DNA from: Phyllobates terribilis
Taxonomy: Eukaryota
Reading direction: 5' to 3'
NCBI RefSeq assembly: GCF_046119375.1
Contig: NW_027362765.1
Location: 389,918,001 to 389,982,000, forward strand
DNA: 64,000 nucleotides
Shown here: piece by piece, positions 9,001 through 48,077 of the stretch
Numbering within the stretch: position 1 is the first letter of the stretch
Layout of the letters: each line of letters opens with the position of its first letter
Notes under the pieces: model-generated
What the model saw: the letters and a program-made list of their open reading frames with translations, nothing else
What the model was told of the DNA's origin: nothing
The model's database searches: none
Program-made: the position numbers and the translations under genes

Positions 9001-11942
9001 CAGGAGTGGACAGCAGGGCATGTATACAGGGATGGTCCTGAGTCAGAGGCCCCCCGCACACACCGGAGAGCCTTATAGAGTGCCGGTCACCAGGAGTGGA
9101 CAGCAGTGCATGTATACAGGGGTTGTCCTGAGTCAGAGGCCCCCCGCACACACCGGCGGGCCTTATAGAGTGCGGGTCACCAGGAGTGGACAGCAGTGCA
9201 TGTATACAGGGGTTGTCCTGAGTCAGAGGCCCCCCGCACACACCGGCGGGCCTTATAGAGTGCGGGTCACCAGGAGTGGACAGCAGTGCATGTATACAGG
9301 GGTGGTCCTGAGTCAGAGGCCCCCCGCACACACTGGAGAGCCTTATAGAGTGCCGATCACCAGGAGTAGACAGCAGGGCATGTATACAGGGGTGGTCCTG
9401 AGTCAGAGGCCCCCCGCACACACCGGAGAGCCTTATAGAGTGCCGGTCACCAGGAGTGGACAGCAGGGCATGTATACAGGGGTGGTCCTGAGTCAGAGGC
9501 CCCCCGCACACACCAGCAGGCCTTATAGAGTGCCGGTCAGCAGGAGTAGACAGCAGTGCATGTATACAGGGGTGGTCCTGAGTCAGAGGCCCCCCGCACA
9601 CACTGGAGAGCCTTACAGAGTGCAGATCACCAGGAGTAGACAGCAGGGCATGTATACAGGGGTGGTCCTGAGTCAGAGGCCCCCCGCACATACTGGAGAG
9701 CCTTATAGAGTGCCGGTCACCAGGAGTGGACAGCAGGGCATGTATACAGGGGTGGTCCTGAGTCAGAGGCCCCCCGCACACACTGGAGAGCCTTATAGAG
9801 TGCCGGTCACCAGGAGTGGACAGCAGGGCATGTATACAGGGGTGGTCCTGAGTCAGAGGCCCCCCGCACACACCGGAGAGCCTTATAGAGTGCCGGTCAC
9901 CAGGAGTGGACAGCAGGGCATGTATACAGGGGTGGTCCTGAGTCAGAGGCCCCCCGCACACACCGGAGAGCCTTATAGAGTGCCGGTCACCAGGAGTGGA
10001 CAGCAGGGCATGTATACAGGGGTGGTCCTGAGTCAGAGGCCCCCCGCACACACCGGAGAGCCTTATAGAGTGCCGGTCACCAGGAGTGGACAGCAGGGCA
10101 TGTATACACGGGTGGTCCTGAGTCAGAGGCCCCCCGCACACACCGGAGAGCCTTATAGAGTGCCGGTCACCAGGAGTGGACAGCAGGGCATGTATACAGG
10201 GGTGGTCCTGAGTCAGAGGCCCCCCGCACACACCGGAGAGCCTTATAGAGTGCCGGTCACCAGGAGTGGACAGCAGGGCATGTATACAGGGGTGGTCCTG
10301 AGTCAGAGGCCCCCCCGCACACACCGGAGAGCCTTATAGAGTGCCGGTCACCAGGAGTGGACAGCAGTGCATGTATACAGGGGTTGTCCTGAGTCAGAGG
10401 CCCCCCGCACACACCGGCGGGCCTTATAGAGTGCGGGTCACCAGGAGTGGACAGCAGTGCATGTATACAGGGGTGGTCCTGAGTCAGAGGCCCCCCGCAC
10501 ACACCGGAGAGCCTTATAGAGTGCCGGTCACCAGGAGTGGACAGCAGTGCATGTATACAGGGGTGGTCCTGAGTCAGAGGCCCCCCGCACACACCGGAGA
10601 GCCTTATAGAGTGCCGGTCACCAGGAGTGGACAGCAGGGCATGTATACAGGGGTTGTCCTGAGTCAGAGGCCCCCCGCACACACCGGAGAGCCTTATAGA
10701 GTGCCGGTCACCAGGAGTGGACAGCATGGCATGTATACAGGGATGGTCCTGAGTCAGAGGCCCCCCCGCACACACCGGAGAGCCTTATAGAGTGCGGGTC
10801 ACCAGGAGTGGACAGCAGTGCATGTATACAGGGGTTGTCCTGAGTCAGAGGCCCCCCGCACACACCGGCGGGCCTTATAGAGTGCGGGTCACCAGGAGTG
10901 GACAGCAGTGCATGTATACAGGGGTGGTCCTGAGTCAGAGGCCCCCCGCACACACTGGAGAGCCTTATAGAGTGCCGGTCACCAGGAGTGGACAGCAGGG
11001 CATGTATACAGGGGTTGTCCTGAGTCAGAGGCCCCCCGCACACACCGGCGGGCCTTATAGAGTGCCGGTCACCAGGAGTGGACAGCAGTGCATGTATACA
11101 GGGGTTGTCCTGAGTCAGAGGCCCCCCGCACACACTGGAGAGCCTTATAGAGTGCCGGTCACCAGGAGTGGACAGCAGGGCATGTATACAGGGGTGGTCC
11201 TGAGTCAGAGGCCCCCCGCACACACTGGAGAGCCTTATAGAGTGCCGGTCACCAGGAGTGGACAGCAGTGCATGTATACAGGGGTGGTCCTGAGTCAGAG
11301 GCCCCCCGCACACACTGGAGAGCCTTACAGAGTGCAGATCACCAGGAGTGGACAGCAGGGCATGTATACAGGGGTTGTCCTGAGTCAGAGGCCCCCCGCA
11401 CACACTGGAGAGCCTTATAGAGTGCCGGTCACCAGGAGTGGACAGCAGGGCATGTATACAGGGGTGGTCCTGAGTCAGAGGCCCCCCGCACACACTGGAG
11501 AGCCTTATAGAGTGCCGGTCACCAGGAGTGGACAGCAGTGCATGTATACAGGGGTGGTCCTGAGTCAGAGGCCCCCCGCACACACCGGAGAGCCTTATAG
11601 AGTGCCGGTCACCAGGAGTGGACAGCAGGGCATGTTTCCAGTCGCTGACAGCGAGCAGAGAACTTGGGATCAATGGAAAGATTGAAACCAGTAAAGAGAA
11701 ACACAACTTCCTGTAAAGTTTTGGTAAATCCATTTAAGGAACCCTTTAAGTCAGGTGATGAGCGCCAGAGCTCGCCGACCCCCCCAGCACTGCAGCCGCT
11801 CACCTGAGGGCCGGCTGAAGAACCTGCTCCTCGCCGCCTCCCGGTGCCGCTTGGCCTGAGGGTTGGAGTCGCTGCTGTGTCCCTTCTTCCAGCGCTTCAC
11901 CTTCCCGGCGGTCCCGGAGCGGAGCTTCCCCGACTTCCCCAT
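4773..11942 (-). CDS. RRP12: RRP12-like protein (ribosomal RNA processing 12), 5' part: join(11804..11942,5676..5899,4773..4856); continues left of the window
   Basis: [28 protein letters not shown]...FFSRPSG / [13 protein letters not shown]...[10 protein letters not shown] / [28 protein letters not shown] matches the vertebrate RRP12 N-terminus. GT-AG junctions with consistent phases. Confidence 0.96.
5676..5899 (-). CDS. RRP12: RRP12 coding exon 2
   Basis: 224 nt, CAG acceptor, GTGAGC donor; [30 protein letters not shown]. Confidence 0.95.
5989..6052. repeat. (TA)n microsatellite abutting a Tc1 end
   Basis: About 30 TA units. Confidence 0.95.
6054..6723 (-). mobile_element. Internally deleted Tc1-like element with about 190-bp inverted repeats
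   Basis: 6054-6245 and about 6527-6723 are inverted copies (TGTGAAAAAGTGTTTGCCCC...). The middle encodes a transposase C-terminal fragment on the minus strand ([19 protein letters not shown]). Confidence 0.85.
6800..7320 (+). mobile_element. Possible Penelope-like/retrozyme pseudo-LTR fragment
   Basis: GAAACGCGTC at 6998-7007 after a short stem, then an AATAAA near 7299. The catalytic CTGANGA core is degenerate. The classification is inference. Confidence 0.3.
7641..7806 (+). mobile_element. V-SINE-like tRNA-derived SINE, 5'-truncated
   Basis: V-domain-like GTGGGTTTCCTCCGGGTTCTCAGGTTTCTTCCCACACTCCAAAGACATG. Tail GATTGTGAGCCCCAATGGGGACAG is shared with the copies at 15.9 and 61.1 kb. Confidence 0.8.
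8211..11635. repeat. 90-bp minisatellite (about 38 copies) in RRP12 intron 1
   Basis: Unit ATGTATACAGGGGTGGTCCTGAGTCAGAGGCCCCCCGCACACACCGGAGAGCCTTATAGAGTGCCGGTCACCAGGAGTGGACAGCAG(T/G)GC. Gives 30-aa repeat pseudo-ORFs on both strands. Confidence 0.96.
11804..11942 (-). CDS. RRP12: RRP12 coding exon 1
   Basis: ATG at 11942, 139 nt, donor G|GTGAGC. Confidence 0.96.
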
Positions 11943-17926: not shown

Positions 17927-18133
17927 NNNNNNNNNNNNNNNNNNNNNNNNNNNNNNNNNNNNNNNNNNNNNNNNNNNNNNNNNNNNNNNNNNNNNNNNNN
18001 NNNNNNNNNNNNNNNNNNNNNNNNNNNNNNNNNNNNNNNNNNNNNNNNNNNNNNNNNNNNNNNNNNNNNNNNNNNNNNNNNNNNNNNNNNNNNNNNNNNN
18101 NNNNNNNNNNNNNNNNNNNNNNNNNNNNNNNNN
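17927..18133. other. Assembly gap (207 N)
   Basis: Run of N. Confidence 0.99.
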
Positions 18134-18484
18134 TTAGGGTTATGCAGCCATTCTGATGAAGATTTTTTTTTCATAGTAAGTACACCAGCCTAATCAGGTA
18201 TAACATGCCTATAGTAATGTATGCAGTTTGTATTGTGAAATCTGGTGACGGGTCCGATCTAAGTCTTAGGTTATCTCTATAAAAATGTAGGTAAATCACA
18301 TTATAATATTATAGCGCTCACTTTAATTTTAGGGTTATGCAGCCATTCTGATGAAGATTTGTTCATAGTAAGTACACCAGCCTCATCAGGTGTAACATGC
18401 CTATAGTAATGTATGCAGTTTGTATTGTGAAATCTGGTGACGGGTCCGATCTAAGCCTTAGATTATCTCTATAAAAATGTAGGT
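18134..18484. repeat. Diverged tandem duplication of about 160 bp (period about 195 bp) next to the gap
   Basis: TTAGGGTTATGCAGCCATTCTGATGAAG...ATAAAAATGTAGGT at 18134 and again at about 18328, with several substitutions. Confidence 0.85.
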
Positions 18485-18812: not shown

Positions 18813-18979
18813 ATGTCCTACGTGCTGGAGGTGGAGGTCCTACAAGGGGTCCGCAATGGCCGTGACCCTGGCAGCTGTGACAGCAGCTTAGATGAGGGTC
18901 TCAGCTTCTCTCCAGATCTGGGGCTGTCCCCCATAACCTGCCTCTCTGGAAACATGGGGCATCTGCACTGTGAGGACAG
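18813..18979 (+). CDS. cdc25d: CDC25-like first coding exon
   Basis: [56 protein letters not shown]; donor AG|GTAACA, phase 2. Confidence 0.75.
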
Positions 18980-21900
18980 GTAACACTGATACAACATTGT
19001 AATGTAATATGTTGTATTATTATGTAACGGATGATTGTGTTTTGTTTTGTTTTTATTTATCTGATTTTACATAAACATTGTAATATTTAATAAAATAACA
19101 AAAAAATATATAATTTTTCAAATTAAATCAATGATGCTATTTACTGACTCTGCCGTCCTGGTATGGGGGGCGCTCTAACCCTGGGGAAATTGCATCTTAT
19201 ATTTATTTATTTTATTATTTAACAGCCTTCTGCTTGATCTCGAGCCAATGGCGACTTGATGGATGAACGATCTGTAGGAAGATCGCTCTTGTGCAGCCTA
19301 GATAGGTCCACCAGGGTCTTCTCCGACGTAGTTAGGTTGCTGGTCTTCCTCTTCGCCTTGTTCCTTCTATTCTTCAGACCATGATGTCCTTCTCACTATT
19401 AATCCGGTGACAGACCTTTTTGTCTGAGGAATCCATTGATTTAAATGTGATCCACTTGCAACCCCTCCCCCCTTCCTCTAAAATAGGCAGGAGTTGTCTT
19501 CTTCTTAGTGGGAAAGTTGGGTGACTTTCAACCAATCCCCTTGCAACAATTTCGGTTATTACCTAACTTGAAAAATCTATGACCAAAACCGTTCTGGGAT
19601 ATATCCTGCAAACCCATTACTACTGGATAGTAAATCAGATTTTATATTCAGGGCTCAAGGAAAGTTGGGTGACAACCAGTATGGTGGCCAGCAGACCTCC
19701 TAATCTGGTTGTCACCCAGTTTTCCTTCCCCATAATGAAGTGATATATCTCATATTTCCTTATCGCAGTATAACTAATCATTTTGACCATTCAGGACTTA
19801 AGAAAAGATGTCACCCAGCTTTCCTAGACTCCTGAATAATTTATCTTCCTAGCTAAAAAGCAATTTAGCACACAGTCCCTTATTGCTGTCATTATTACTA
19901 TTTAGGACTTAAGGACAGATGGCTGACAACCAATATGGTCGCCATCAGAACTCCTAATTTGGTTGTCACCCAGCTTTCCTAGACCCCTGAAAGACATATT
20001 TTCCTGTTATGATGCAATATAGCACACAGTCCTTTGTTACTGTCCTTTTTATTATTCAGGGCATAAGGAAAGATGGCTGACAACCAATATGGTCGCCATC
20101 AGAACTCCTAATTTGGTTGTCACCCAGCTTTCCTACACTCCTGAATGACATATCTTCCTAGATATGAACTAATATAGAACATATTCCCACATTATTGTCA
20201 TTGTTATTTTACTATTCAGGATATAAAGAAAGTTGGGTGACAACCAATATGATCAGCAGCAGAATTAATCTGGTTGACCCCAGTTTTTCTTATTACAGAA
20301 TAACTAATAATTTTGACCATTTAGGACTGAAGTAAAGATGTCACCCAGCTTTACTAGACACCTGAAATAATTATCTTCCTAGTTATGAATCAATGTAGCA
20401 CACATTTCTTTATTACTGTCATTTTTAATGTTTAGGATATATGGATAGATGGCTGACAACCAATATGGTCGCCATCAGAACTCCTAATCTGGTTGTCACC
20501 CAGCTTTCCTAGACTCCTGAATGACATCTTTTCCTGTTATGATGCAATATAGCACACAGTCCTTTGTTACTGTCATTTTTATTAGGGCATAAGAAAAGAT
20601 GTCTGACAACCAATATGGTCGCCATCAGAACTCCTAATCCGGTTGTCACCCAGCTTTTCTTCTGAATGACATATTAGCCTGGATATTAAGGGAAACATTC
20701 ACATTCCCTTATTACTGTATATCTTATCTTTTTTTTATGTTCGCGACTTAAGAAAAAGATGGTTGACAGCCAATATGGTCGGAATTGGAACTCCTGATAG
20801 TGTTGCCACACAGCTTTCCTAGTATCCTGAATGGCCTGGTTATACAGTAATATATCCTGATATATCCCACATTCCTTTATTATTGTAAAAATATTTTTTT
20901 TTTAGTTTCAGACTCAAAAAAAAGAATAAGGTCACCATTAGAACTCTTAATGTGGCTGTCACTCAGCTTTCCCAGGCTCCTGAATGGCAAATATGTCAGA
21001 CCCTTTATTAATGCATAACTAAGGGGAAAGGAAAACTGAATGACACCCCTCTGTGAGCCGCAGTGATATGTATTGGCTGCCACCAAACTTTTCCAGAAGA
21101 ATTGAGGATGACTTCAAAACTTTTATTTACTTCTATTTTCTTTTTCTATTACTTTGGTGGAATGTTTCCAGCATGTTGCTTTTGATTTACAATGAATTCT
21201 GTCCGGATACATCTTGTGGTTTCACGCCTGAGTTACCTGCTGTAGGAATGGTTGTCACTCGGTTTGGGTCTAACCCACAACAATACTCTGGTAATTTCCT
21301 TTGTTATCTTTTCTCAGTCTGACACCAAGGAGAAAGCTGAAATTATCCCCGGACTCCCAAGATGCAAGCCCCATGGCGACACCAAGCTTACGAGAGCCTG
21401 CCATGGGAACTGCTGGACTCTCAGGTCAGCCGCATCACTCCCACACAAAGCCGGCTGATGAAACCCCAGTGACTGCCGCCACACACTGTCACCAGGCACC
21501 GCGGAGCCCAGCAACAGCCGAAAACACAAATCCAGTACCAGGGCTATGGGGAAATCAGCATGCACTGCTCTGCCCTTCACTAACATAGTCATAAATATTA
21601 ACCTAAATCCATGTATTTGGTGCTAAAAATCATTTTTACAATTGGGTTTCATTAAAAATGTTGCACCGTTTGGCTTTTACAGGCTCTTGGTTTCCCGGCA
21701 CATTCAACTTTGATGTGGTCAGTGGTCATATATCAGCTAGAGGAGCTCAGAATAAGACTGATAAAAGAGTGACAAACTCTCCAGTCATAACAAGCTCACT
21801 GAAGGATTCTCAGTTAACTCATTCTAAAAATTGTGCACCATTTTGCTTTTACAGGCTCTTTGTTTCTATTGCACATTCAACTTTTATGTGGTCAGGGAGC

Positions 21901-24900
21901 TCAGAAAAAGACAGATGCTGTCTTTCAGTCTTTTGAGTGTGGGAGGAAACTGGAGAACCTGGAGAAAGCCCATGCAAACATGGGGAGAACATACAAACTG
22001 CTTGCAGATGTTGTCCTTGGTGGGATTTGAACCCAGGACCCCAGTGCTGCAAGGCTGCAGTGCTAACCACTGAGCCACTGTGCTGCCCTTAAAACAGAGG
22101 GGATAAAAGAGTAATAAACTCTCCAATCTTAACAAGCTCTCTGATGGATCCTCAGTTAACTCATTCTGCAGCCAGCAATAGATGTTACAACACAGAAACT
22201 ATGGAAGGGAAATTATGCAATAAGGACGTAATGCCAAAAATGATTTTTAGCCCCAAATACACATGGATTTAAGCAAAGAAAGAAGATTGTCCCCAAAGAT
22301 GAACACCCCCTTTAATATTTCCTTGCTATACATTCTTCATGGAATCTTGTTTACTTGTTTTCTACCCTTTTTTGTCAGCATGGTTGTACATGGGCAGGCA
22401 AGATAAATGTCGGCCATACCTGTCGATTTCAGCAGGATCAGAGGACCACGTCCATCTGTATTGCCGTCTGCACTGTCTATTTGTGGCTGTAGAATGAGTT
22501 ATCTAGGAATCTGTCAGTGAGCTCATTCTGACAGAGAGTTTGTAACACTTTTTTCTGTCCCATCTCAGCTAATTTATGATCACATAAAAGTTCCGCTCAA
22601 CTTTGATGTGGTCTGTGGAGCTAAATAAAAAGAGAGGAGCTCAAGAAAAAGACAAATAAAAGAGTTACAAACTTTCTGTCAAAAAAAAGAGCTCACTGAC
22701 AGATTCTGCAGAAATGTGCAGGGAAAAAAAACAACCTAAACTGTAAAAGCCAAACAGTGCAAACATTTTGAATGAAATTCAATTGCAAAAATAATTTTTA
22801 GCCCAAAGTATAAATGTATTTAATAATAATAAAAAAAAAAATGCCCCCAAATCACCGGCATTTGAAAACCACTGATAGCACTCATATGCAAAAAAAATGG
22901 ATGTGTGAATGAGCCCTAATGTAAATAATTAACTGTATAACGAAATGTTATGTAACTTTCTAATTAACTTTCATTTGTTCGGAGATCTCTGCTTGCTGTG
23001 AGAAGCAATAGTTGTATCTGTTTAGAGTTGCAGAATCCACACAGAACTAGTGCTTGTTGTATCCAGTCCAGAGGATCCTCAGTAATATAATACATCAGCA
23101 GCGCAAATCCCTAAACTGCTTAGGGGAGTTTTTCATTTCTTGAAGCTTTCCTTGAAAAGTTTTTGAAGTCTTTTGGAAGAGTTTTCGTTTCCTGAACTTT
23201 TTTTTTTGATTGGACAGTGCCTAGTTCGGAGCAGATCTATTAGGATCCGCTTCTAAGCAATGACATGCACTTTCTTTTTTTTTTTTCTTCATCAGGTTTT
23301 ACCAAATCTCTTTAGGAAAAAAAAAAAAACGCTCAAAAAAAATCCTCATCTGAACAGCAAAGTGGATTTTCCATAGAAATGATTAGAAGAGTTTTCCAAG
23401 CTGGATTTGGGAAAGGATCCGCTCAGAAAAAGTCTTCCGAAAACTTCATGTGAACATAGCCTTAGAGAACTATTTGTGGGCTCTGTGTAATGCTTAACTT
23501 CCCCTGTGGTGGCGCTGTGGGACAAATGAACGGTTGATGTCAGGTTTTCTTAAAGACTTTTGCATTATTTTTTTTTTTTTTTTACTGCGCAGGAAAACCC
23601 AGCATCACTTTTCAGCAGGTCTCCAAAAATGTCTATCCTGCCACCGTATAATGATCGATACCTTTATGTGTCTATAAAATCCCATTAATGATCATCATAA
23701 CGTCCGTATCCAACAGTTTCAGGTCTCATCCTCTATAAACTGCCATGTTGTTGTCGTGCACTGTTACTAAGTTGTAGGTAAACTGCATTAACTTCTATGG
23801 AGGTGCTTGGACTTTAGTAACAGCCGACAGCCGGACGCTAGTGATGGCGCGATCTGTGGTCCCATGGGTTATAATCTCATGCAGGAAACATCAATAAGGT
23901 CAGGATTAAATCTGGTGAGACATTATATGGCATTATATAAGGGATTTTTGAGTCATAGCATAAGACTCTCTTCGAGCACTGCAAATATTTTCATCTAAGG
24001 CCGGTCGGACCGAGATCGGAACGCAGGGCACGGACTGGCTGGCGGCTCTCGCAACAACTGCATAGAAATACATGAAGCTGTCACGCTCGGACCGAGAGAG
24101 CCGCCAGCCAGTCCGATTTATACGGCGGTCTGACTGCGCCCTAAACAATGTCCTCCCCCATCAGGAGCAGCTTCAGATGTACATAAAGCATTGCTGCCCC
24201 CTTGGCATCGCGCCATCATCATGTAGGGACTATTTCCAGGGTTACATATATTTTATGACATATTTCAATATAATTAGCACAAATGCATAATATATATAAT
24301 TTTTAATATTATGTTGCAGATTTATCAAGTGAATTAACTCCGGTGTTAAAACCACGAGTCTGTAATACAAGGTGAGAGAGAGAGCGAGACACCCGCTGTA
24401 TGTGGAGATACCAGGATTTAATGGGAACCGCAACTTTTTTAGCCTATTTTTTCTTAAAAGGTGCTGGAATAAAAACATCAGCTGAAGACTGCTCGTCTTA
24501 ATGAAGTTTCAGTTGGCATAAGATACCCCAGATTCATTAGGAGGTGTTTGCCTCTCGATAAATTTGGCGTAGCTTTAGGTGTTCAGCGTCAGGGACTGGA
24601 GCTGATTTCTGTCGACCACGCTCAGAAACGTTCCCTTTTGGCTAAGACCCACCTAGTTTTCAAGAAGCTGGCGGAGCTGGCCAAACGTTGCAACTGTGAG
24701 AATTTTGGGGAAAACTGATGAATCGGGGCCATCGTGTAACAAACAGATATCTAGAAAACGTGATTCTGCTATAACAGCACGAAGACGACACCATCTGCTG
24801 ATCTGATCCTTGTGCTCGCCTCCTATAGCAGAATAAGCTCAGAAATGCAGCACTCAACTTGTTTCCACCGGACAACCCCCTTATCACCTATCTAAATTGA

Positions 24901-27900
24901 TCGTGGGACCAACTGCTGGTCCGACCACTGGGACCAGTACCAATGGACAGAACGAGGAACTTTTCTCCCCATTAGAATGGAGGAGGAGTACATTCTCGAC
25001 CTGTGCTCCATTCATTCTGCATGGGGCCGCCGGGTGCTGCATTCAGCATTTTAGTCAGCCCCAAAGAGAAAGAATGGAGCTGCAGTCGGGCGTCTGAATT
25101 CCCGCTCCAATCTAACTAGAAAAAAAAGTGCTCCGTAGGGGAGTTAATCGGTGCGAGTCCTAGACATCGTACACCCACCAATCAATAAGTTATCACCAAT
25201 CCTTTGGATAGGTGATAACTTGTTTTCAACGGAGAACCCCTTTAAATTAAATATAGTCCATGCCGTAATTTCTCACGAAAGCCACAATATGTTTGATGAT
25301 ATAATGTTGCGATCAGAGACGAAATGAACACTATTTTGGCCTCCATTGGGTAAATAAGCTTGGAGTGTATGCCAGGAGCTTTCCAGAGTAAAGTGATATG
25401 AACAGGGTCTAAAGCCCCCCAAACACATTTTACTAATATCCTTCGAAGCCGCTGATATTGACAGGATCAGCCGATGGTCTAATTTGTATGAAGCCCCCGA
25501 CTGTTGATTATTGGAGGAAGATAAGGATCCGGTGTTTCTGATTTTGGACTGCTGATCCTTTTGCTATCCGAGAGATAAGCTGAAGCTCCCCCCATAGAGA
25601 ACACTGGAGCGATTGGTCGATCGAGTGCTCCTGTGGATGGGAGAGTTGATCGAGTTAGCTCCCGGTTGAACAGTCGGACCGCTATATAAAGTGTATGGGG
25701 GCTTAACTCTCCGATAAAGGGAGACAGCAAGATATTCCTGAATCAGAAAGTCAGATTTTGCCAGTAGTCTACCATGTAGGTCAATATATTTGTATTTTAT
25801 TATAATTCCCCATTTTTTATTTTGCAGTCATTCTTCTTCTCCATCGAGCATCTACAAGCCAGTGAGTGTCCTAGGTCCAGTTTCTGTGTATCGGCGCCTT
25901 GTGTTTCATAGCACAGGAGGACTCATCAATGTTATCTTCAAGTTTCTTTATCAAATAATTTTTATCTTTTTTTCATATCTAGAAAAAGGCGTCAAGAAAA
26001 GTGAATGTAAGAGAACAGGAGAACGCACGTCGTAAAGACACTAGAAAGGTACAGACTGCCCTTCAATCATCAGGATCGGTCAGTGCGTGGCCAAGATCGG
26101 TGGGGTCAGACCTTCACGGATTATTTTTTTCCCTTCTGTTTATCCAGAAAAGATCTCGCCTGAAGCTTTTAGACTTGTTCCAAAGCCCAGAACTTCTGAG
26201 TGGTCACCAGGGTCAGAGACTGGAAACAGACAAGAAACAAGAAGACGGAGAAAGGGAGACAGAGAATATACAATGCTCTGAGAGCAAGAGGGGATCGGTA
26301 ACATAACAGTGTATTAGTATTGGTCTGAGCCCTCTCTGATGGCCAAAGTTACTTTACACTTTATTGCAAATTCGGTTTATTGACAAACTTTTACATACTT
26401 TCTGCTTTTTGCAGAAAACTTTGTGATCCCGGGAAAGAAAACTTTATTGTTTCCGATAACATGTGAACCTTTTCTGTACTTTTCTCTTTAGATGGCTGAC
26501 GTCAGTCCGACGTTTAAGGATGCCGAAGAGGAAAGCGACGACCTCATAGGAGATTTCTCCAAAGTACGTGATAAACTCTTCGGTGTCGTCAATTGTGAAA
26601 AAAATGCTAAATAATTGGGAAGTATTGCAGGATATATCGGAGAGCTGTATCATCATATATTCAGTATTTAGTAAGTCATCAAAATAACAGAAAATATTCC
26701 CATTGTAGGCATTTATGCCATAGCGTGTATATACGGTACACGATAGGAGCGGGTCCCGGGAGTGGAGCATTGGGCGCCCTGCGACCCTCATCTGCCAATT
26801 CACAGCCTTTTATGGTACAGTAAAATGGTTTCCAAGGGATAGGTGATAACTTGCCGATTGCTGGGGATTTAACAGCTGAGACCCCCACAGATCCCAAGAG
26901 CATGAATGCCCCGAGTGGTGGCCACATGTGTGCACAGGCGCGTCATTCATTGTCTATGGATGTGCAGGAGACAGTGATCATCAATGTCCGGAAGCCCCAA
27001 GGAATAGAGCAGTGACTGCGCTCTTGGCATCAGTAGGGGATCCAGTAAAACCCCTTTAACTGGAAATCCAATAACTGTCTGAACAATGAGGTGTCCACTC
27101 CTACCACCAATCCTTAGAATGGTCCTCCTCCTCCATTTCTCTTCATATTCACAGTCGCTGACTAGTCGGTTGTACAGAGGCACTCCATACACCGCCATAT
27201 AGTGTTTCCGTACAGAAATATTATCCCCTAGTAGCATTTCCATTTTTCTGCAAGGTCATCAATGAAAATAATGGAAGTGCCAGACCCCTTACATGCTGGA
27301 CCCACGCAGAGCTCGAAGGGACAGATTGTCTATAATGGGGGTCCATCATTTTATGTAAAGTAACAATGAACAGTCAGAAACGATCATCTTGTAAATGGCT
27401 CTTATAAAAGTTACTAAACACAAGTGAATGTATCTTTCGCAGCCTCACATCCTACCGGTAGAAAGGGGCAATCACCAGGACCTGAAATATATCACTTGTA
27501 ACACAGTAAGTAGCTGCAATAAAGTATCAAATCTTTTTAAAAGGGAGTTATTCACATTCACTGCTATGGCTAGAAGGGAAAAAAAAATTGGACCTGCCGA
27601 CCATAGTCGGTGTGAATCGGTTTGTACGACCCGGTTCATTGCCCGTGACGGCAATCAGTGGCGGGAGAAGAGAAATGCCTTTACCTGACGGCATTGTGAC
27701 TTCTCCTATGATCAACCGGATTGGTGCGATGTAATTTTTACGGCATGATGCACAAGTCGCACCAAAAGAAGATTTAGGTACAAGGCGGCTCTCCCGCTCC
27801 AGTCCAGTGTCGTGATCAATGGTCCGGGCTGTGCAAATCGATTTGCTCCAATACTGCCACTAAGCCTTTTAGTTTGACAACCTATGGAATAGTATACCGC

Positions 27901-30900
27901 CATATAGTCCCTGAATGCTGGTGCTGTAAAGTGTCCAAATAAGTAATACACCCAATACCCTGATAGTGCCCTGCGTACAGCATCCATAAGTTTCATCCGG
28001 TCCACAGACACTACGTACATTGTCCTGGCGTGCCATTCCCCATGTAGTGGAAAATAACGCTGCACTTTACCCACATAAATGTGACATACATACATTGGCA
28101 CAGTGACGCTATAAAGGTGGCAAAACTAGTATTGTCTTATTGACATTACTAGCGCTACAAAAGTAATAGTTCATGTCTCCAGCAGGTCCGACTAGTTGTT
28201 GGCTTCTTTGGGAATTGGGTACGGAACATTGTTATTATGTACCAGGTTGTAGTTGCGAGGGAAAAGCTGCCAACTAACCCCACATAAAAGGCTAAAACTG
28301 GCAGATTTTTCTCACATTTGCAATATTAATTTTTGTTGTTTTTCTCGAGCAAAAACAGAACAACAAAAATGATGGAAGTGCTGGATCCTTCACATGACGG
28401 ACATTGCAGCACAATTGTGCAAAAAATGTTGTGAAGTTTAAAAAAGTTACAGATGATGAATTATACAGAAATATCAGGATAATGAAATCCAAAAGAAAAG
28501 GAAAACAGTCGAAACAAATACAATTAGCTTAAAAAGGAACAAATAGGAGCAAATTAAGAAAAAAGTAATTATTTTAGGACCATTTTGCAGTGCAGAAGCA
28601 ATGATGAATCTGCCCCTTAAAATATCTTCATATTCTGTATTCCCGGGGATTTATCTATCTCCTGATGCTTTATACTCAGCTAGCGCACCTGCTCGGCGGA
28701 GGATATCAGGGCGATGTACAGACGTACCTTCTAGTGGACTGCCGCTATCCATATGAATACACTGGAGGACACATCAAGGTATGACGCTCTATGGACCCAC
28801 TGACATTGTGTATGTACCATGTGTTTAAAGAGGTATTCCCAAAAAATTAAGTTATCCCTTATCCATTGATTACTTGCTAATCGTTGGGGGTCTGACCACT
28901 GGGACCTTCACCGATCCCAAAAAGGCGGCTTTGGAACCACAAGAATGAGGCTCCGCAACCCCATGGTGTTTGGAGCAGAGGTCTCTGCTCCATTGCTTAT
29001 AGGACTGACAGAAAGAACCGAGCGCAGTGCTCAGCAGATCCGAGCATGCACATCTCCGCTACATTCACAATGGGGCTAAGGAGCCTCGTTCTCAGGGTGC
29101 CACAGCCCCATTTCTCATGATGGCTGAGGGTCCTTCAAATGCACAAAGCCTAAGAATGAAGGAGCTGCAGTGCTGCAACTGTGCAGAGAATTGCATGTAG
29201 CCCAATTTAACGGACTGCTGTGACCACCTTCATTCTTATGATCAACGGTGGTCCTGCAGATCACACCCCAGTGATCGTTAAGCTACGACATATCCTAGCG
29301 ATATTCTATCACTTACTGACGTGGGTAAAGCCACTTTATGTTGGGTCAATAATGGAGGCGCAAGTGGAATGTCCACTGTGGTCTGCTTGTGTCTTAGTAA
29401 TAGTCATTCACTCGGATCTTTGTGAATATTACCACATTTTATAGTGAAGCTGATCATACACGGAAGGAAAGAATAACTTCTCTTTGCTTTTAACAGGGGG
29501 CCCTGAACTTCTATAGAGAAGACCAAATTTCAGAGCATTTTCTTCAGAGCCCATCCTTTGCCCCTGGCCGAAGAGTAGTCATCTTCCACTGCGAATTCTC
29601 CTCTGAAAGAGCTCCAAAACTGTGCGTAGAAACGATTTATGCATTTATCATCCGTATCATTTAAGAAAACATACACTATGGTGAAGTGCAGCCGGGGAGG
29701 AAGGATTAACAAGCTTCTCCGTCCTTATCCACTTCCCACCATGGCAAATTTTCTATTTTTATACTTTCGTCTTTTCCTCTTCTTCTTCCAAAAACTTTTT
29801 TTTTTATATTTCCGTTGACGCAGCCGTATAAGAGCTTGTATTTTTACAGTTTTGAGTAATGTTCATTTTATCGTTGTAACAAAAGAAAAACAACGCTAAA
29901 GAAAAAAAACAATCGATACACCAGAATTGCAATTTTTTTTATCAACGTGCCTCCCCTAAAAAAAGTAATAAAAAGGTATCTGGTCAATGTATGTCCTCAA
30001 AATGGAACAAATAAAAAAATCAACTTGCCAAGCAACAAGCAAACTCCATTACCGCTCCATTGATGGAAAAATAAAAAAGTTATGAGTCTCAGAAAATGGC
30101 AACAATTTTTGTTTTTGCAAAGTTCTACATTTTTTAAAACCACTGAAATAATAACAATAAAATATATATTTTTAGTATCACCGTAATCGTACCAACTGGA
30201 AGATTTCATGTTGCTGGATAATTTTTAACGCACATTGAATGACGTAAACACTAAATCGGAAAAACTACAGTGCAATTTCTGTTTTTCGTCATTTCAAACC
30301 ACTTTGAAATTATTCCTGAAAAGTACAGTATATGGGAAAATGAATGGTGTCAGCCAAAGCAATAACAAAATCTCATAAAAAAAAAGTTTTGGAAGAAGGA
30401 AAGGAAAACACGAAAGCACAAAAAAAAAAAAAATTTGGCTCAAATGAGAAGGGGCTAAAGTGCTTGTCTAGGGGGTACATTAGCAAAATATTCTGAATTG
30501 TTAACTTGTATTTTGAAAACTTTTCTTTTCTTTCAATCAAGATGTCGGATTTTCAGAAACCTGGACAGAAAAGCGAACCGGTATCCTCACCTGTACTACC
30601 CCGAACTCTATCTGTTACAGGGAGGATATAAGGAATTCTACGAAACATTCAAAGTGAGTATTTCATTTTATTTAGAGAAAAAGTTAGCATATAGTTAGCT
30701 TTATTCACCAAAAATGCATTGTTTGCGGGGGTTTTTTTCAGCGTTTTTCCACTTTCTCGTTGTTTTTGATGGTGAAAAAAATGCTGCAAAAACGCTGAAA
30801 GAATTAACATTCAGCAGATTTAAAAAAGCAGCAGTTTTCCAAATCAGTCAGGAAAAACAGTAATCGTGTGCATGAGATTTCTGAAATTTCCAGCTTTTGC

Positions 30901-32300
30901 TGGTTCTGTAAAAATTGTAATAAAAGCAAATTTTAATTTGCATTTAAAAAATGCAGCAAAAATGCAAGTGTGAACATAGCCTAAGACGCAGTGGGTTTTC
31001 TGCAAGCAAATCCGCAGATTTAAATCCACAGCATTTATGCCATGTGTGGAACTTAAGTTTAACCTTTTAAGGACCCTGGGGTTTTTCCGTTTTTGTATTT
31101 TCGTTTTTTGCTCCCCTTGTTCCCAGAGCCATAGCGTTTTTATTTCTTGGTCAATATGACCATGTGAGGGTTTATTTTTTGCGGGATGAGTTGTACTTTT
31201 GAACGACATTGCTTGTTTTACCATATCGTGTACGGAAAACAGGAAAAAAAATCCAAGTGCGGAGAAATTGCAAAAAAAGTGCAATACCACTACACAGATG
31301 TTTTTTTTTTATTTTCTTTTACCAAAGTCACTGAATGCTAAAACTGACCTGCCATTATTATTCTCCAGGTCCTTCCGAGTTCGTAGATACCAAACATGTA
31401 TAGGTTCTTTTTTATTTAAGTGGTGAAAAAAAAAAAAAAAGGTGCCATTTTCCAAGACCCGTAGCGTCTCCATTTTTCGGGATCTGGGGCCTAGTGAGTG
31501 CTTATTTTTTGCGCACCGAGCTGAAGTTTTTATTGATACTATTTTGGGGTAGATCCGATGTTTTGATCGCCCGTTATTGCATTTTATTGCAATGTTGCGG
31601 CGACCAAAAAACGTAATTCTGGAGTTTAGAATTTTTTTCTTGTTGCGCCGTTTACCGATCGGATTAATTCTTTTATTATATTGATAGATCGGACGATTCT
31701 GAACGTGGCAATACCAAATATGTGTATGTGGGTTTTTTTTTTATTACTTTATTTTGAATGGGGCGAAAGGGGGTGATTTAAATGTTTATATTTATTTTTT
31801 TTTTTATATTTTTAAAAACTTTTTTTTACACTTTTTGCTTGGTTCTATAGTCTCCATAGGAGACTAGAAGCCACACTTGTCTGATCAGCTCTGCTACATA
31901 GAGATGATGAGCAGATCACCTCTATGTAGCAGAAATGCTCCTGTGCTATGAGCGCCGACCACTAGGTCATCCATCCCCCCGGTAAGCTACCTTCAGATTA
32001 TAAAATGCACCCCCATTTTCCTCCAAAATTTTTTTGGGAAAAAAGTGCATCTTAAATATCGTATTTTTTTAATTATATCAGTAATTTATGCTTTTTTTTT
32101 TTTTCTTCCAGTGCCTGTGTGAGCCTCAAGGTTACGTCAAAATGGTTCACAAGGATTTCCGAGACCAATTAAAAAAATATCAAAAAAAGAAAAAGAATTT
32201 ATCCGGACAAAGGATCCGAAAAGAACTTTTTAAGCCGCTGACCTCGAGTAAAAGCTTCAGTCCTGTTACGACACAAAGTGCTGAAATTGTAGAGCTCTAA
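18813..32300 (+). CDS. cdc25d: CDC25-family (M-phase inducer) dual-specificity phosphatase, probably the cdc25d paralog; about 450 aa. Model: join(18813..18979,21318..21534?,23593..23645?,25828..25861,25983..26048,26148..26297,26492..26563,27443..27505,28680..28778,29497..29621,30542..30653,32112..32300)
   Basis: N-terminal [12 protein letters not shown]|[11 protein letters not shown] resembles CDC25 LSPVT.L and TP[KR]R motifs. Catalytic domain reads DLIGDFSK|[32 protein letters not shown]|[18 protein letters not shown]|CRIFRNLDR...[30 protein letters not shown]. Catalytic-domain exon boundaries and phases match CDC25A/B. The exon 2 donor and exon 3 are uncertain. Family assignment is secure; the paralog name is inferred. 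Confidence 0.88.
19510..21000. repeat. Satellite-like array of hairpin units (about 32-bp inverted arms, about 27-nt loop, AT-rich linkers) in cdc25d intron 1
   Basis: TTCAGG...GGAAAG(T/A)TGG(G/C)TGACAACCA - loop - TGGTTGTCACCCAGCTTTCCTAGACTCCTGAA recurs about 9-10 times at 110-190 bp spacing. Confidence 0.88.
21318..21534 (+). CDS. cdc25d: CDC25-like coding exon 2 (3' end uncertain: 21424 or 21534)
   Basis: TTTTCTCAG acceptor, phase fits exon 1; [23 protein letters not shown]... Confidence 0.6.
21600..22260. mobile_element. Palindromic MITE family copy, partly duplicated and interrupted by a SINE
   Basis: AAAAATGTTGCACCGTTTGGCTTTTACAG ... ATTTTTAGCCCCAAATACA. Other copies at about 5215-5340, 22480-22810, 48895-49190, 58160-58460 and 62335-62640. 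Confidence 0.6.
21920..22088 (-). mobile_element. V-SINE-like copy with an intact tRNA-like head
   Basis: Minus strand reads GGCAGCACAGTGGCTCAGTGGTTAGCAC (A box)...GGGTTCAAATCCC (B box), then the V-domain. Confidence 0.85.
23593..23645 (+). CDS. cdc25d: Candidate small CDC25-like exon
   Basis: Strong poly-T...CAG acceptor; [18 protein letters not shown]. Phase bridges 21534 to 25828, but the donor (GTATAA) is weak. Confidence 0.35.
23999..24141. mobile_element. Harbinger-type MITE
   Basis: TAA flanks on both sides. Internal sequence homologous to 13481-13675. Confidence 0.65.
25828..25861 (+). CDS. cdc25d: CDC25-like 34-nt exon
   Basis: TTTTGCAG acceptor, GTGAGT donor; [11 protein letters not shown]. 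Confidence 0.6.
25983..26048 (+). CDS. cdc25d: CDC25-like exon (basic, NLS-like)
   Basis: [22 protein letters not shown]; phase 0/0. Confidence 0.6.
26148..26297 (+). CDS. cdc25d: CDC25-like exon
   Basis: TTTATCCAG acceptor; [17 protein letters not shown]...SESKRGS; GTAACA donor. Confidence 0.65.
26492..26563 (+). CDS. cdc25d: CDC25-like exon
   Basis: [24 protein letters not shown] (conserved LIGDFSK). Confidence 0.88.
27443..27505 (+). CDS. cdc25d: CDC25-like exon (63 nt)
   Basis: [21 protein letters not shown]; compare CDC25B LQTVDGKHQDLKYISPET. Confidence 0.92.
28680..28778 (+). CDS. cdc25d: CDC25-like exon (99 nt, CH2A motif)
   Basis: [33 protein letters not shown]. Confidence 0.95.
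29497..29621 (+). CDS. cdc25d: CDC25-like active-site exon
   Basis: [10 protein letters not shown]...[16 protein letters not shown] (HCX5R). Confidence 0.95.
30542..30653 (+). CDS. cdc25d: CDC25-like exon (CH2B motif)
   Basis: [37 protein letters not shown]. Confidence 0.95.
32112..32300 (+). CDS. cdc25d: CDC25-like last coding exon
   Basis: [24 protein letters not shown]...IVEL*. Candidate polyA signal AATAAA at 32825-32830. Confidence 0.92.
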   Translation, partial: CLCEPQGYVKMVHKDFRDQLKKYQKKKKNLSGQRIRKELFKPLTSSKSFSPVTTQSAEIVEL

Positions 32301-33209: not shown

Positions 33210-36200
33210 CAGGACTTCTAGAGAAAGCCTGAGAGTCCTGCTTCCTTCCCCACTCATAGAGAAAGCCTGTGAGTCCTGCTTCCTCCCCCACTCATAGAGA
33301 AAGCCTGTGAGTCCTGCTTCCTCCCCCCACTCAGAGAAAGCCTGTGAGTCCTGCTTCTTACATCCACTCATATAGAAAGCATGTGAGTCCTGCTTCTACA
33401 TCCACTTATCAAGCCTGTGAGTCCTGCTTCTCCCACCCACTCATAGAGAAAGCCTGTGAGTCCTGCTTCTTACATCCACTCATAGAGAAAGCTAATAAGT
33501 CCTGCTTCCTCCCCCCACTCCTAGAGAAAGCCTGCGAGTCCTGCTTCTTACATCCACTCATATAGAAAGCATGCGAGTCCTGCTGCCTCCACCCACTCAT
33601 AGAGAAAGCCTGTGAGTCCTGCTTCCAGCACCCACTCATATAGAAAGCCTGTGAGTCCTGCTGCCTCCAAGCACTCATAGAGAAAGCCTGTAAGTCCTGC
33701 TTACTCGACCCACTCATAAAGAAAGCCTGTGAGTCCTGCTTACTCCACCCACTCATATAGAAAGCCTATGTGAGTCCTGCTTCCTGCACCCACTCATAGA
33801 GAAAGCCTGTGAATAATGCTTCCCCCACTCATTCATAGAGAAAGCCTGTGAGTCCTCCTTCTCCATCCACTCAGAGAAATCCTGTGAGTCCTGCTTCCCC
33901 CACCCACTCATATTGAAAGCCTGTGAGTCCTGGTTCCCCCACCCACTCATATAGAAAGCCTGTGAGTCCTGCTTCCCCCACCCATTGATAGAGAAAGCCT
34001 GTGAGTCCTGCTTCTCCATCCACTCATAGAGAAAGCCTGTGAGTCCTGCTTCTCGATCCACTCATATAGAAAGCCTGTGAGTCCTGGTTCCCCCACCCAC
34101 CCATATAGAAAGCCTGTTAGTCCTGGTTCCCCCACCCACTCATAGGGAAGGCCTGTGAGTCCTGCTTCTTACATCTACTCATAGAGAAAGCCTGTGAGTC
34201 CTGCTTCTCCATCCATTCATAGAGAAAGCCGGAGTCCAGCTTCCTGCACCCACTCATAGAGAAAGCCTGTGAGTCCTGCTTCTCCATCCACTCATAGAGA
34301 AAGCCTGAGTCCTGCTTCTCCGTCCACTCATATAGAAAGCCTGTGAGTCCTGCTGCCTCCACCCACTCATAGAGAAAGCCTGTAAGTCCTGCTTCCTGCA
34401 CCCACTCATATAGAAAGCCTGTAAGTCCTGCTTCCTGCACCCACTCATATAGAAAGCCTGTGAGTCCTGCTTCCCCCACCCATTCATAGAGAAAGCCTGA
34501 GCCTGTGAGTCCTGCTGCCTCCACCCACTAATAAAGAAAGCCTGTGAGTCCTGGTTCCCCCACCCACTCATAGAAAGCCTGTTAGTCCTGCTTCTCCCAC
34601 CCACTCATAGAGAAAGCCTGTGAGTCCTGCTTCTTACATCCACTCATAGAGAAAGCCTGTGAGTCCTGTTTCCTGCACCCACTCATAGAGAAAGCCTGTG
34701 AGTCCTGCTTCTCCATCCACTCATAGAGAAAGCCTGTGAGTCTTGCTTCTCCATCCTCTCATATAGAAAGCCTGTGAGACCTGCTGCCTCCACCCACTCA
34801 TAGAGAAAGCCTGTGAGTCCTGGTTCCTGCATCCACTCATATAGAAAGCCTGTGAGTCCTGCTTCCCCCACCCATTCATAGAGAAAGCCTGTGAGTCCTG
34901 CTTCTCCATCCACTCATAGAGAAAGCCTGTGAGTCCTGGTTCCCCCACCCACTCATATAGAAAGCCTGTGAGTCCTGCTGCCTCCACCCACTCATATAGA
35001 AAGCCTGTGAGTCCTGCTGCCTCCATCCACTAATAGAGAAAGCCTGTGAGTCCTGGTTCCCCCACCCATTCATAGAGAAAGCCTGTTAGTCCTGCTTCCC
35101 CAACCCACTCATAGAGAAAGCCTGTGAGTCCTGGTTCCCCCACCCACGCATAGAGAAAGCCTGTGAGTCCTGCTTCTTACATTCACTCATAGAGAAAGCC
35201 TGAGTCCTGCTTATCCATCCATTCATAGAAAAAGCCTGTGAGTCCTGCTTCCTGCACCCACTCATAGAGAAAGCCTGTGAGTCCTGCTTTTCCATCCACT
35301 CATAAAGCCGGTGAGTCCTGCTTCTCCGTCCACTCCTATAGAAAGCCTGTGAGTCCTGCTGCCTCCACCCACTCATAGAGAAAGCTTGTAAGTCCTGCTT
35401 CCTGCACCCACTCATATAGAAAGCCTGTGAGTCCTGCTTCCCCCCCACCCACTCATAGAGAAAGCCTGTGAGTCCTGCTTCCCCCACCCACTCATATAGA
35501 AAGCCTGTGAGTCCTGCTGCCTCCACCCACTAATAGAGAAAGCCTGTGAGTCCTGGTTCCCCCACCCACTCATATACAAAGCCTGTTAGTCCTGCTTCCC
35601 CCACCCACTCATATAGAAAGCCTGTGAGTCCTGCTTCCCCCACCCACTCATAGAGAAAGCCTGTGAGTCCTGCTTCTTACATCCACTCATAGAGAAAGCC
35701 TGTGAGTCCTGCTTCTCCATCCACTCATAGAGAAAGCCTGTGAGTCCTGCTTCCTGCACCCACTCATAGAGAAAGCCTGTGAGTCCTGCTTCCCCTACCC
35801 ATTCATAGAGAAAGCCTGTGAGTCCTGCTTCTCCGTCCACTCATAGAGAAAGCCTGTGAGTCCTGCTTCTCCGCCCACTCATAGAGAAAGCCTGTGAGTC
35901 CTGCTTCCCCCACCCATTCATAGAGAAAGCCTGTGAGTCCTGCTTCTCCATCCACTCATAGAGAAAGCCTGTGAGTCCTGGTTCCCCCACCCACTCATAT
36001 AGAAAGCCTGTGAGTCCTGCTGCCTCCACCCACTAATAGAGAAAGTCTGTGAGTCCTGCTTCCCCCATCCACTCATAGAGAAAGCCTGTGAGTCCTGCTT
36101 CTTACATCCACTCATAGAGAAAGCCTGTGAGTCCTGCTTCTCCATCCACTCATAGAGAAAGCCTGTGAGTCCTGCTTCCTGCACCCACTCATAGAGAAAG

Positions 36201-37222
36201 CATGTGAGTCCTGCTTCCCCCATCCATTCATAGAGAAAGCCTGTGAGTACTGCTTCTCCGTCCACTCATAGAGAAAGCCTGTGAGTCCTGCTTCTCCGCC
36301 CACTCATAGAGAAAGCCTGTGAGTCCTGCTCCCCCCACCCATTCATAGAGAAAGCCTGTGAGTCCTGCTTCTCCATCCACTCATAGAGAAAGCCTGTGAG
36401 TCCTGGTTCCCCCACCCACTCATATAGAAAGCCTGTGAGTCCTGCTGCCTCCACCCACTAATAGAGAAAGCCTGTGAGTCCTGGTTCCCCCACCCACTCA
36501 TAGAGAAAGCCTGTTAGTCCTGCTTCCCCTACCCACTCATAGAGAAAGCCTGTGAGTCCTGGTTCCCCCACCCACTCATAGAGAAAGCCTGTGAGTCCTG
36601 CTTCTTACATCCACTCATAGAGAAAGCCTGTGAGTCCTGCTTCTCCATCCACTCATAGAGAAAGCCTGTGAGTCCTGCATCCACACATATAGAAAGCCTG
36701 TCAGTCCTGCTTCTCCATCCACTCATAGAGAAAGCCTGTGAGTTCTGCTTCTCCATCCACTCATAGAGAAAGCCTGTGAGTCCTGCTGCCTCCACGCACT
36801 CATAGAGAAAGCCTGTAAGTCCTGCTTCCTGCACCCACTCATATAGAAAGCCTGTGAGTCCTGCTTCCCCCACCCATTCATAGAGAAAGCCTGTAAGTCC
36901 TGCTTCTCCATCCACTCATAGAGAAAGCCTGAGTCCTGCTTCCCCCACCAATTCATAGAGAAAGCCTGTGAGTCCTGCTTCTCCATCCACTCATAGAGAA
37001 AGCCTGTGAGTCCTGCTTCTCCATCCACTCATAAAGAAAGCCTGTGAGTCCTGCTTCTCCACCCCCTCATAGAGAAAGCTTGAGTCCTGGTTCCCCCACC
37101 CACTCATAGAGAAAGCCTGTGAGTCCTGCTTCTCCATCCACTCATAGAGAAAGCCTGTGAGTCCTGCTGCCTCCACTCACTCATATAGAAAGCCTGTGAG
37201 TCCTGCTGCCTCCTCCCACTCA
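33210..37222. repeat. 38/39-bp minisatellite (about 100 copies) between cdc25d and PGAM1
   Basis: Unit TAGAGAAAGCCTGTGAGTCCTGCTTCCCCCACCCACTCA with a variable pyrimidine block. Confidence 0.95.
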
Positions 37223-37559
37223 TAAAGTCTGAGAAAATTATCTTTTTTTGCATATGATTAATTAATATAGCTAGAGATTAATATATTCAAGTGGAATTTA
37301 ATACAACTCAGATTTTACAAAAATCCACATTTGCCAAGGAGACCTCAGAGAATAATAAGGGGAATTAAATTTGCAGAGAATAACTTCTTCGCAAATCAAG
37401 TTTCCTGGGAAAACCAGCACGAACAGACAAATGTGAATTGTGTCTGATCCACTCAGATCTAATCATAACATCGCCATGGAAATCCAGTCTTCGTCCATCC
37501 CGTCCTCACTAACTCCCCCCGGCAACCTATTCACGTCTCCCCTCCAGCATCTGCACAAC

Positions 37560-38106: not shown

Positions 38107-48077
<9,971 letters not shown>

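What the first reader, a model, noticed from the sequence alone, without database searches (positions are those of the whole stretch)
18813..32300. Hidden fourth-type CDC25 phosphatase gene between RRP12 and PGAM1, where human has none
Seen: eleven to twelve small exons, mostly invisible in the ORF track, splice in phase into a CDC25 with a complete catalytic domain ([13 protein letters not shown], HCEFSSER). The CDC25B substrate-docking residues R488/R492/Y497 are kept ([12 protein letters not shown]). Known: RRP12 and PGAM1 are direct neighbours in human, and CDC25A/B/C lie elsewhere; a divergent cdc25d has been described in fish and Xenopus. Inference: this is an active cdc25d that mammals lost from this locus, i.e. 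an extra and poorly studied cell-cycle trigger.
Basis: partly seen in the sequence, partly recalled or inferred. Interest (0 to 1): 0.78.

Follow-up and report, generated by a model that had tools for sequence, protein, structure and literature searches.

The report
Frog cdc25d gene, already annotated
The stretch holds an intact 12-exon gene for Cdc25d, the fourth vertebrate CDC25 cell-cycle phosphatase; it is real, but this frog's public annotation already has it and the literature already describes the family, so it is an ordinary gene.

Summary
On the + strand at 18813-32300, twelve small coding exons with eleven GT-AG introns add up to 1236 nt (411 codons plus stop). Each exon's translation is an exact substring, at the expected offset, of RefSeq XP_073541056.1 ("uncharacterized protein isoform X1", Phyllobates terribilis). 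The gene is therefore already annotated. A second isoform uses another first exon at 19259-19335.

A careful ML tree places the product inside a clade supported at 100/97. That clade holds NCBI-named "cell division cycle 25 homolog d" proteins of sharks, gar, bowfin, sturgeon and eels, plus Xenopus laevis Cdc25D, other amphibians, turtles and a platypus protein. It is separate from the A+B and C clades, and the same frog also has a CDC25A.

The gene sits directly upstream of pgam1 in shark, gar, Xenopus and turtle. The turtle and this frog also have RRP12 on the other side.

Catalytic Cys/Arg, the [13 protein letters not shown] and CEPQ motifs, and the CDC25B R488/R492/Y497 equivalents are invariant family-wide. 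The modelled domain superposes on human CDC25A/B/C.

Cdc25d and its absence from birds, crocodiles and placental mammals are published. Enzymatic activity is inferred, not shown. The reads test failed.

The parts
18813..18979 (+). coding exon 1 (ATG at 18813; aa 1-55 plus 2 nt). Holds the N-terminal block [20 protein letters not shown], which is shared with other CDC25s.
19259..19335 (+). alternative first coding exon of isoform X2 (P0328, XP_073541057.1, 381 aa). It splices to exon 2 in the same phase.
21318..21424 (+). coding exon 2 ([12 protein letters not shown] block)
24320..24371 (+). coding exon 3
25828..25861 (+). coding exon 4 (34 nt)
25983..26048 (+). coding exon 5
26148..26297 (+). 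coding exon 6 (LFQSPE block)
26492..26563 (+). coding exon 7 (LIGDFSK motif, where the conserved C-terminal half begins)
27443..27505 (+). coding exon 8 (HQDLKYI motif)
28680..28778 (+). coding exon 9 ([14 protein letters not shown]; Cys258 is the equivalent of the CDC25B back-door Cys426)
29497..29621 (+). coding exon 10 (active-site loop HCEFSSER; catalytic Cys302 and Arg308)
30542..30653 (+). coding exon 11 (Arg317, Arg321 and Tyr326, the equivalents of CDC25B R488, R492 and Y497; YYPELY..GGYKEF)
32112..32300 (+). coding exon 12 (CEPQGY motif, basic C-terminal tail, stop at 32298-32300)
11800..11942 (-). first coding exon of RRP12, the upstream divergent neighbour ([10 protein letters not shown]...)
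38107..38245 (+). first coding exon of PGAM1, the downstream neighbour ([14 protein letters not shown]...). Further exons lie at about 42064-42854.

Best explanation
This is the cdc25d gene of the golden poison frog, Phyllobates terribilis. Cdc25d is the fourth CDC25 paralogue of jawed vertebrates. It has kept its ancestral position immediately upstream of pgam1, here with RRP12 on the other side.

The gene encodes a 411-aa protein. The N-terminal regulatory region of about 205 residues is predicted disordered and carries Ser/Thr-Pro sites. The C-terminal domain of about 185 residues is a rhodanese-fold CDC25 catalytic domain.

The most likely mechanism is inferred from family-invariant residues. 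Cys302 of the HCX5R loop attacks the phosphate on the inhibitory Thr14/Tyr15 of cyclin-bound CDKs. Arg308 holds the phosphate. Arg317, Arg321 and Tyr326 dock the CDK-cyclin substrate. The kinase is thereby activated and the cell cycle moves forward, probably in restricted tissues rather than as the main mitotic trigger.

Shown here: the gene structure, identity with the RefSeq model, family and subfamily membership, synteny, the fold and residue conservation. Inferred: catalytic activity, CDK as the substrate, and the biological role.
For: - Gene model: 12 exons, all introns GT-AG, in phase. Each exon is an exact substring of XP_073541056.1 at the expected offset. The annotated gene span of 13,488 nt equals 18813-32300, with a 1279-aa gene upstream on the - strand (RRP12 by its position and the N-terminal translation) and a 254-aa His_Phos_1 gene downstream.
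- Family search: the best full-length relatives are a family of about 400 aa. NCBI names these proteins 'cell division cycle 25 homolog d' in sharks, gar, bowfin, sturgeon and eel.
- Tree: the careful ML tree gives the D clade 100/97, A+B 98/99 and C 100/98. The window's protein is nested with Dendrobates and Anomaloglossus and, further out, with X. laevis Cdc25D (BAK26545.1). The same frog species also has a CDC25A (the quick tree agrees).
- Synteny: cdc25d lies directly upstream of pgam1 in gar, shark, Xenopus and turtle.
- Catalytic domain: Pfam Rhodanese at 8e-12. PDB matches to CDC25C/B/A catalytic domains at 1e-57 to 1e-51. In the AlphaFold model, residues 210-380 have block-mean pLDDT of about 75-97 and match human CDC25A/B/C at target TM 0.79-0.90.
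- Residues: C302, E303, R308, R317, R321 and Y326 are invariant in 52 sequences.
- Transcripts: a Xenopus cDNA protein (AAH82713.1) shows that the orthologue is transcribed. PMC9178385 and PMC3937516 report cdc25d expression in frog and zebrafish.
Against: - No transcript evidence was obtained for this species. The five runs that hold 16-26% of the stretch's sampled words are only guessed to be RNA.
- The N-terminal region does not match Pfam M-inducer_phosp (PF06617), which CDC25A and CDC25C of frogs do match.
- From memory of Dalle Nogare et al. 2007 (the paper is not held), zebrafish cdc25d did not complement a fission-yeast cdc25 mutant.
- No enzymatic assay of any amphibian Cdc25d is known to me.
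Confidence: 0.93

Rival explanations
1. The gene encodes a CDC25-fold protein that no longer acts as a canonical CDK-activating mitotic inducer. It could be a weak or specialised phosphatase with other substrates, or a scaffold or competitor.
For: The D clade sits on long branches, with a stem of 0.38-0.62. PF06617 is absent. The frog protein lacks the RSPSMP-type motif and the KEN box seen in the A/B/C rows of the alignment. The C-terminal tail differs, RIRKELFKP against WAGE(K/R)SKRE. PMC9178385 calls Cdc25d divergent, with restricted and species-specific expression. From memory, zebrafish cdc25d failed to complement yeast cdc25.
Against: Every catalytic and substrate-docking residue known from CDC25B is invariant across 42 D-type proteins spanning sharks to turtles. 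That argues for selection on catalysis and on CDK-cyclin docking. The fold is a close match to CDC25A/B/C.
Confidence: 0.12
2. The gene is an orthologue or a lineage-specific duplicate of CDC25A, B or C that was mistaken for a fourth type.
For: RefSeq names for frog orthologues vary: 'M-phase inducer phosphatase 1-like', '1-B-like' and '3-like'.
Against: Three separate, well-supported clades appear in both trees. The same species carry A and C as well, for example Phyllobates CDC25A and Ranitomeya CDC25C. The position next to pgam1 is conserved from sharks onward.
Confidence: 0.01
3. The gene is a decaying, unexpressed relic on its way to loss, as happened in birds and placental mammals.
For: No RNA evidence was obtained here for this species. 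The gene has been lost repeatedly in other lineages (PMC9178385).
Against: The reading frame is intact and all 22 splice dinucleotides are canonical. Identity to Dendrobates is 92-93% overall and 93-100% in the four catalytic exons. The catalytic residues are invariant. RefSeq models two isoforms.
Confidence: 0.03

Closest known systems
Xenopus laevis Cdc25D (BAK26545.1 / F5HR98; Nakajo et al. 2011, as cited in PMC9178385)
   Same: Same clade. Similar length, 413 against 411 aa. Rhodanese is the only Pfam match. Same position upstream of pgam1. Same catalytic motifs.
   Different: About 51% identical overall. The N-terminal half is poorly conserved outside short blocks. Expression is known for Xenopus (epidermal ectoderm, liver diverticulum) and unknown for this frog.
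Fish and shark 'cell division cycle 25 homolog d' (e.g. gar XP protein P0126, Heptranchias P0102; zebrafish cdc25d of Dalle Nogare et al. 2007)
   Same: Orthologous clade at 100/97. Directly upstream of pgam1. Invariant active site.
   Different: Ray-finned fish proteins carry an insertion of about 50-80 aa in the loop before the strand that leads to HCX5R. The upstream neighbour there is PI4K2A, not RRP12. Fish and sharks keep a KEN motif that frog proteins lack.
Human CDC25A, CDC25B and CDC25C (PDB 1c25, 1qb0/1cws, 3op3, 8roz)
   Same: Catalytic domain is 46-52% identical, with target TM 0.79-0.90. [16 protein letters not shown] and CEPQ.Y are present, as are the CDC25B hot-spot residues R488, R492 and Y497.
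   Different: A separate paralogue clade. The N-terminal region is about 120-150 aa shorter and has no PF06617 match. There is no RSPSMP 14-3-3 motif. The C-terminal tail differs.

Membership tests
CDC25 dual-specificity phosphatases | Rhodanese-fold catalytic domain | tested here: met
   Pfam PF00581 at E 8e-12, residues 252-346. Foldseek finds the human CDC25A/B/C catalytic domains at E 1e-18 to 1e-20 and target TM 0.79-0.90.
CDC25 dual-specificity phosphatases | Active-site loop H-C-X5-R (HCEFSSER) | tested here: met
   HCEFSSER lies at 29587-29610. Cys302 and Arg308 are invariant in 52 sequences.
CDC25 dual-specificity phosphatases | Family signature blocks [41 protein letters not shown] and CEPQ.Y | tested here: met
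   All are present and aligned with A/B/C and with a sea-cucumber CDC25.
CDC25 dual-specificity phosphatases | CDK-cyclin docking hot-spot (CDC25B R488, R492, Y497) | tested here: met
   Arg317, Arg321 and Tyr326 are invariant. The CDC25B numbering is from established knowledge.
CDC25 dual-specificity phosphatases | N-terminal regulatory domain matching Pfam M-inducer_phosp (PF06617) | tested here: not met
   There is no PF06617 hit at E<=0.01 for the window's product, Xenopus Cdc25D or gar cdc25d. Frog CDC25A (9e-61) and Xenopus CDC25C (3e-31) do match. Only short blocks are shared: SPV..L..M..L, TP(K/R)R(K/R)L and LF.SP.
CDC25 dual-specificity phosphatases | Dephosphorylates pThr14/pTyr15 of CDKs | not testable with these tools
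   This needs a biochemical or oocyte assay.
cdc25d subfamily | Monophyly with named cdc25d proteins, apart from A, B and C | tested here: met
   The D clade has support of 100/97 in the careful tree and 99 SH-aLRT in the quick tree.
cdc25d subfamily | Conserved position immediately upstream of pgam1 | tested here: met
   Seen in the window, turtle (29), Xenopus (28), gar (26) and shark (30).
cdc25d subfamily | Spliced transcripts in this species | tested here: inconclusive
RefSeq models two isoforms.

The most novel reading that the evidence does not exclude
Cdc25d is a fully competent CDK-activating phosphatase, contrary to the published remark that it 'possibly has no phosphatase domain'. 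In frogs it has also lost the RSPSMP-type 14-3-3 site and the KEN box of its paralogues. It would then be a checkpoint- and APC/C-insensitive CDK activator used in particular tissues, and its loss in therian mammals, birds and crocodiles would have removed that route.
Probability: 0.25. Interest if true: 0.4.

Novelty: already known. Interest (0 to 1): 0.15.

Why it matters
This adds little beyond housekeeping. The gene deserves the name cdc25d in the P. terribilis annotation and in many other frog annotations, where it is currently called 'uncharacterized protein' or 'M-phase inducer phosphatase 1-like/3-like'.

Three modest points go beyond the literature read here:
- Every catalytic and docking residue is invariant across 42 D-type proteins. 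This argues against the published suspicion that Cdc25d lacks a phosphatase domain. In ray-finned fishes a large loop insertion splits the domain, which may explain that impression.
- The cdc25d-pgam1 linkage dates back to the ancestor of jawed vertebrates.
- A platypus protein groups with turtle Cdc25d, so among mammals the loss seems to be therian or placental rather than general.

Tried and rejected
- Pfam scans of single exons gave almost nothing, only a sub-threshold Rhodanese hit for exon 9. Exons are too short for domain models.
- NCBIfam gave only chance-level rhodanese hits; it is a prokaryote-oriented library.
It supplied the Pyxicephalus orthologue that opened the family.
No junction evidence was obtained.
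- The look-up of encoding contigs returned no DNA for the Dendrobates or Phyllobates loci because the files are too large, so dN/dS among dendrobatids could not be computed.
- The platypus protein is not on record as a called gene, so its neighbours could not be checked.
- Dalle Nogare et al. 2007 (PMC2150743) is not held.
- Earlier scan notes had nothing on this locus.
- Rejected readings: an orthologue of A, B or C (trees); a pseudogene (intact frame, conserved residues).
Full report
**Observation**

[22 protein letters not shown] and [12 protein letters not shown] are all present, and a final exon starts with CLCEPQGY. Searched exon by exon, the active-site exon and the following exon hit only human CDC25A/B/C chains in the PDB, at E down to 1e-10 for 37 residues. 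In those alignments the equivalents of the CDC25B residues R488, R492 and Y497 are retained. The CDC25B numbering comes from established knowledge of its substrate-docking hot-spot.

**Gene model**

The 41-aa active-site exon, searched against the representative protein library, found a 415-aa Pyxicephalus protein. That protein aligned collinearly to nine places in the window. Its own homologue search brought in a family of about 400 aa. The closest member, from Dendrobates tinctorius, aligned in ten collinear pieces.

Inspection of the boundaries gave 12 coding exons. There are 11 GT-AG introns, the phases are compatible, and the total is 1236 nt. The 90% cluster of the Dendrobates protein contains XP_073541056.1 of Phyllobates terribilis, which is 411 aa. 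Every exon's in-frame translation is an exact substring of that protein at the expected residue offset.

The annotated gene spans 13,488 nt, exactly 18813-32300. It has a 1279-aa gene upstream on the opposite strand and a 254-aa His_Phos_1 gene downstream. In the window these are RRP12, with its ATG at 11942 on the - strand, and PGAM1, with its ATG at 38107.

The window is therefore P. terribilis, and the gene is already in RefSeq under an uninformative name. Isoform X2 (381 aa) starts in an alternative exon at 19259-19335.

The stored RefSeq protein served as the whole-length reference once its identity to each exon had been shown.

**Which CDC25 it is**

The homologue lists show about 400-aa proteins without the PF06617 domain in frogs, caecilians, salamanders, turtles, sharks, rays, gar, bowfin, sturgeon and eels. 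NCBI names many of these "cell division cycle 25 homolog d". The 500-570-aa CDC25A and CDC25C proteins of the same species score lower.

A careful IQ-TREE analysis of 53 proteins over 393 columns gives three clades: C (100/98), A+B (98/99) and D (100/97). Inside D the branching follows the species tree. The window's protein sits with Dendrobates (100/99), then Anomaloglossus, Hyla and Bufo. X. laevis Cdc25D (BAK26545.1) lies further out among the frogs. A quick tree of 56 proteins over 557 columns agrees. P. terribilis also has a CDC25A in the A clade.

**Synteny**

The D gene lies directly upstream of a 254-aa His_Phos_1 (pgam) gene on the same strand in every locus checked:
- spotted gar, with PI4K2A upstream
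- the shark Heptranchias, with PI4K2A upstream
- X. laevis
- the turtle Emydura, with RRP12 upstream, as in this window

The linkage with pgam1 therefore predates the split between cartilaginous and bony vertebrates.

**Likely function**

Pfam finds only the Rhodanese domain. The whole protein matches the CDC25C/B/A catalytic domains in the PDB at 1e-57 to 1e-51 over residues 205-392.

An AlphaFold model built from a 52-sequence alignment is confident for residues 210-380 and disordered for 1-205. Its domain superposes on human CDC25A/B/C at target TM 0.79-0.90.

Across 42 D-type proteins plus A/B/C and a sea-cucumber CDC25, several residues are invariant. They include the catalytic Cys302, Glu303, Arg308 and the docking residues Arg317, Arg321 and Tyr326. 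The back-door Cys258 is nearly invariant.

I infer a working CDK-directed phosphatase. This step is inference, not demonstration.

Three differences from A/B/C stand out:
- The N-terminal region is shorter and shares only short blocks with them.
- The frog protein has LFQSPE where B and C have RSPSMP, and QEN where other CDC25s have KEN.
- The C-terminal tail differs.

**What is known**

PMC9178385 states that many jawed vertebrates have Cdc25b, c and d. It reports that Cdc25d was not found in crocodiles, birds or placental mammals. It also says that frog and zebrafish cdc25d were described by Nakajo et al. 2011 and Dalle Nogare et al. 2007, with restricted expression. PMC3937516 calls zebrafish cdc25d weakly expressed.

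The finding is therefore a correct rediscovery of a known, annotated gene.

That paper's remark that Cdc25d possibly has no phosphatase domain is not borne out here. In ray-finned fishes a 50-80-aa loop insertion splits the domain and weakens the Pfam match, which may explain the remark.

**Limits**

- No reads could be laid.
Local scripts and the tandem-repeat scan did read the window file as a whole.
- The runs found are only guessed to be RNA.
- Absence of the gene from squamates, birds and therians rests on the literature and on their absence from a top-120 list.
- The human locus was not examined.

Noticed in passing
window 19259-19335: An alternative first coding exon (MDERSVGRS...) is used by RefSeq isoform X2. 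It replaces the conserved N-terminal block [15 protein letters not shown], so the two isoforms may be regulated differently.
   Followed up: partly
window 33219-37224: A 39-bp minisatellite of about 104 copies (86% matches) fills 4 kb of the 5.8-kb spacer between the cdc25d stop codon and the PGAM1 start codon.
   Followed up: no
window 1968-4263 and 8211-11635: Large G-rich tandem arrays lie downstream of the RRP12 start on the - strand, apparently in RRP12 introns: 30 bp x 11, 22 bp x 91 (99% matches) and 90 bp x 38 (95% matches). They create long spurious ORFs in both strands.
   Followed up: no
window 17927-18133 and 18134-18484: A 207-N assembly gap lies 680 bp upstream of the cdc25d ATG and abuts a 192-bp repeat (1.8 copies). 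The promoter region is therefore incomplete.
   Followed up: no
window 595-1008 (-), 44631-45104 (-), 54393-55067 (+), 63547-63978 (-): Tc1/mariner-type transposase remnants. Pfam finds HTH_Tnp_Tc3_2 in the first and DDE_3 in the third and fourth. The copy at 44631-45104 was not scanned and is judged from its translation, which closely matches the one at 54393-55067.
   Followed up: partly
window 57441-57960 (+): Exons that look like EXOSC1 ([13 protein letters not shown]..., [28 protein letters not shown]) lie downstream of PGAM1. This continues the RRP12-PGAM1-EXOSC1 order recalled for human 10q24. There was no Pfam hit for the 50-aa piece.
   Followed up: partly
proteins P0126, P0105, P0107, P0156 (ray-finned fish cdc25d): A 50-80-aa Ser/Pro-rich insertion sits in the loop between GGHIKGA..L and the strand before HCEFSSER. 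Tetrapod and shark Cdc25d and A/B/C all lack it.
   Followed up: partly
protein P0002 (platypus A0A6I8P431, 299 aa): It groups with turtle Cdc25d at 100/99 on a long branch, so monotremes may retain cdc25d. Its genomic neighbours could not be checked.
   Followed up: partly
trees: Tetrapod CDC25A is nested beside CDC25B, and the teleost 'cdc25a-like' proteins fall in B. This agrees with the published idea that A is a tetrapod duplicate of B. A lamprey CDC25 attaches to the D stem, but on a very long branch.
   Followed up: no
window 19809-20657: Tandem copies of an element of about 150 bp (82-84% matches) lie in intron 1 of cdc25d.
   Followed up: no
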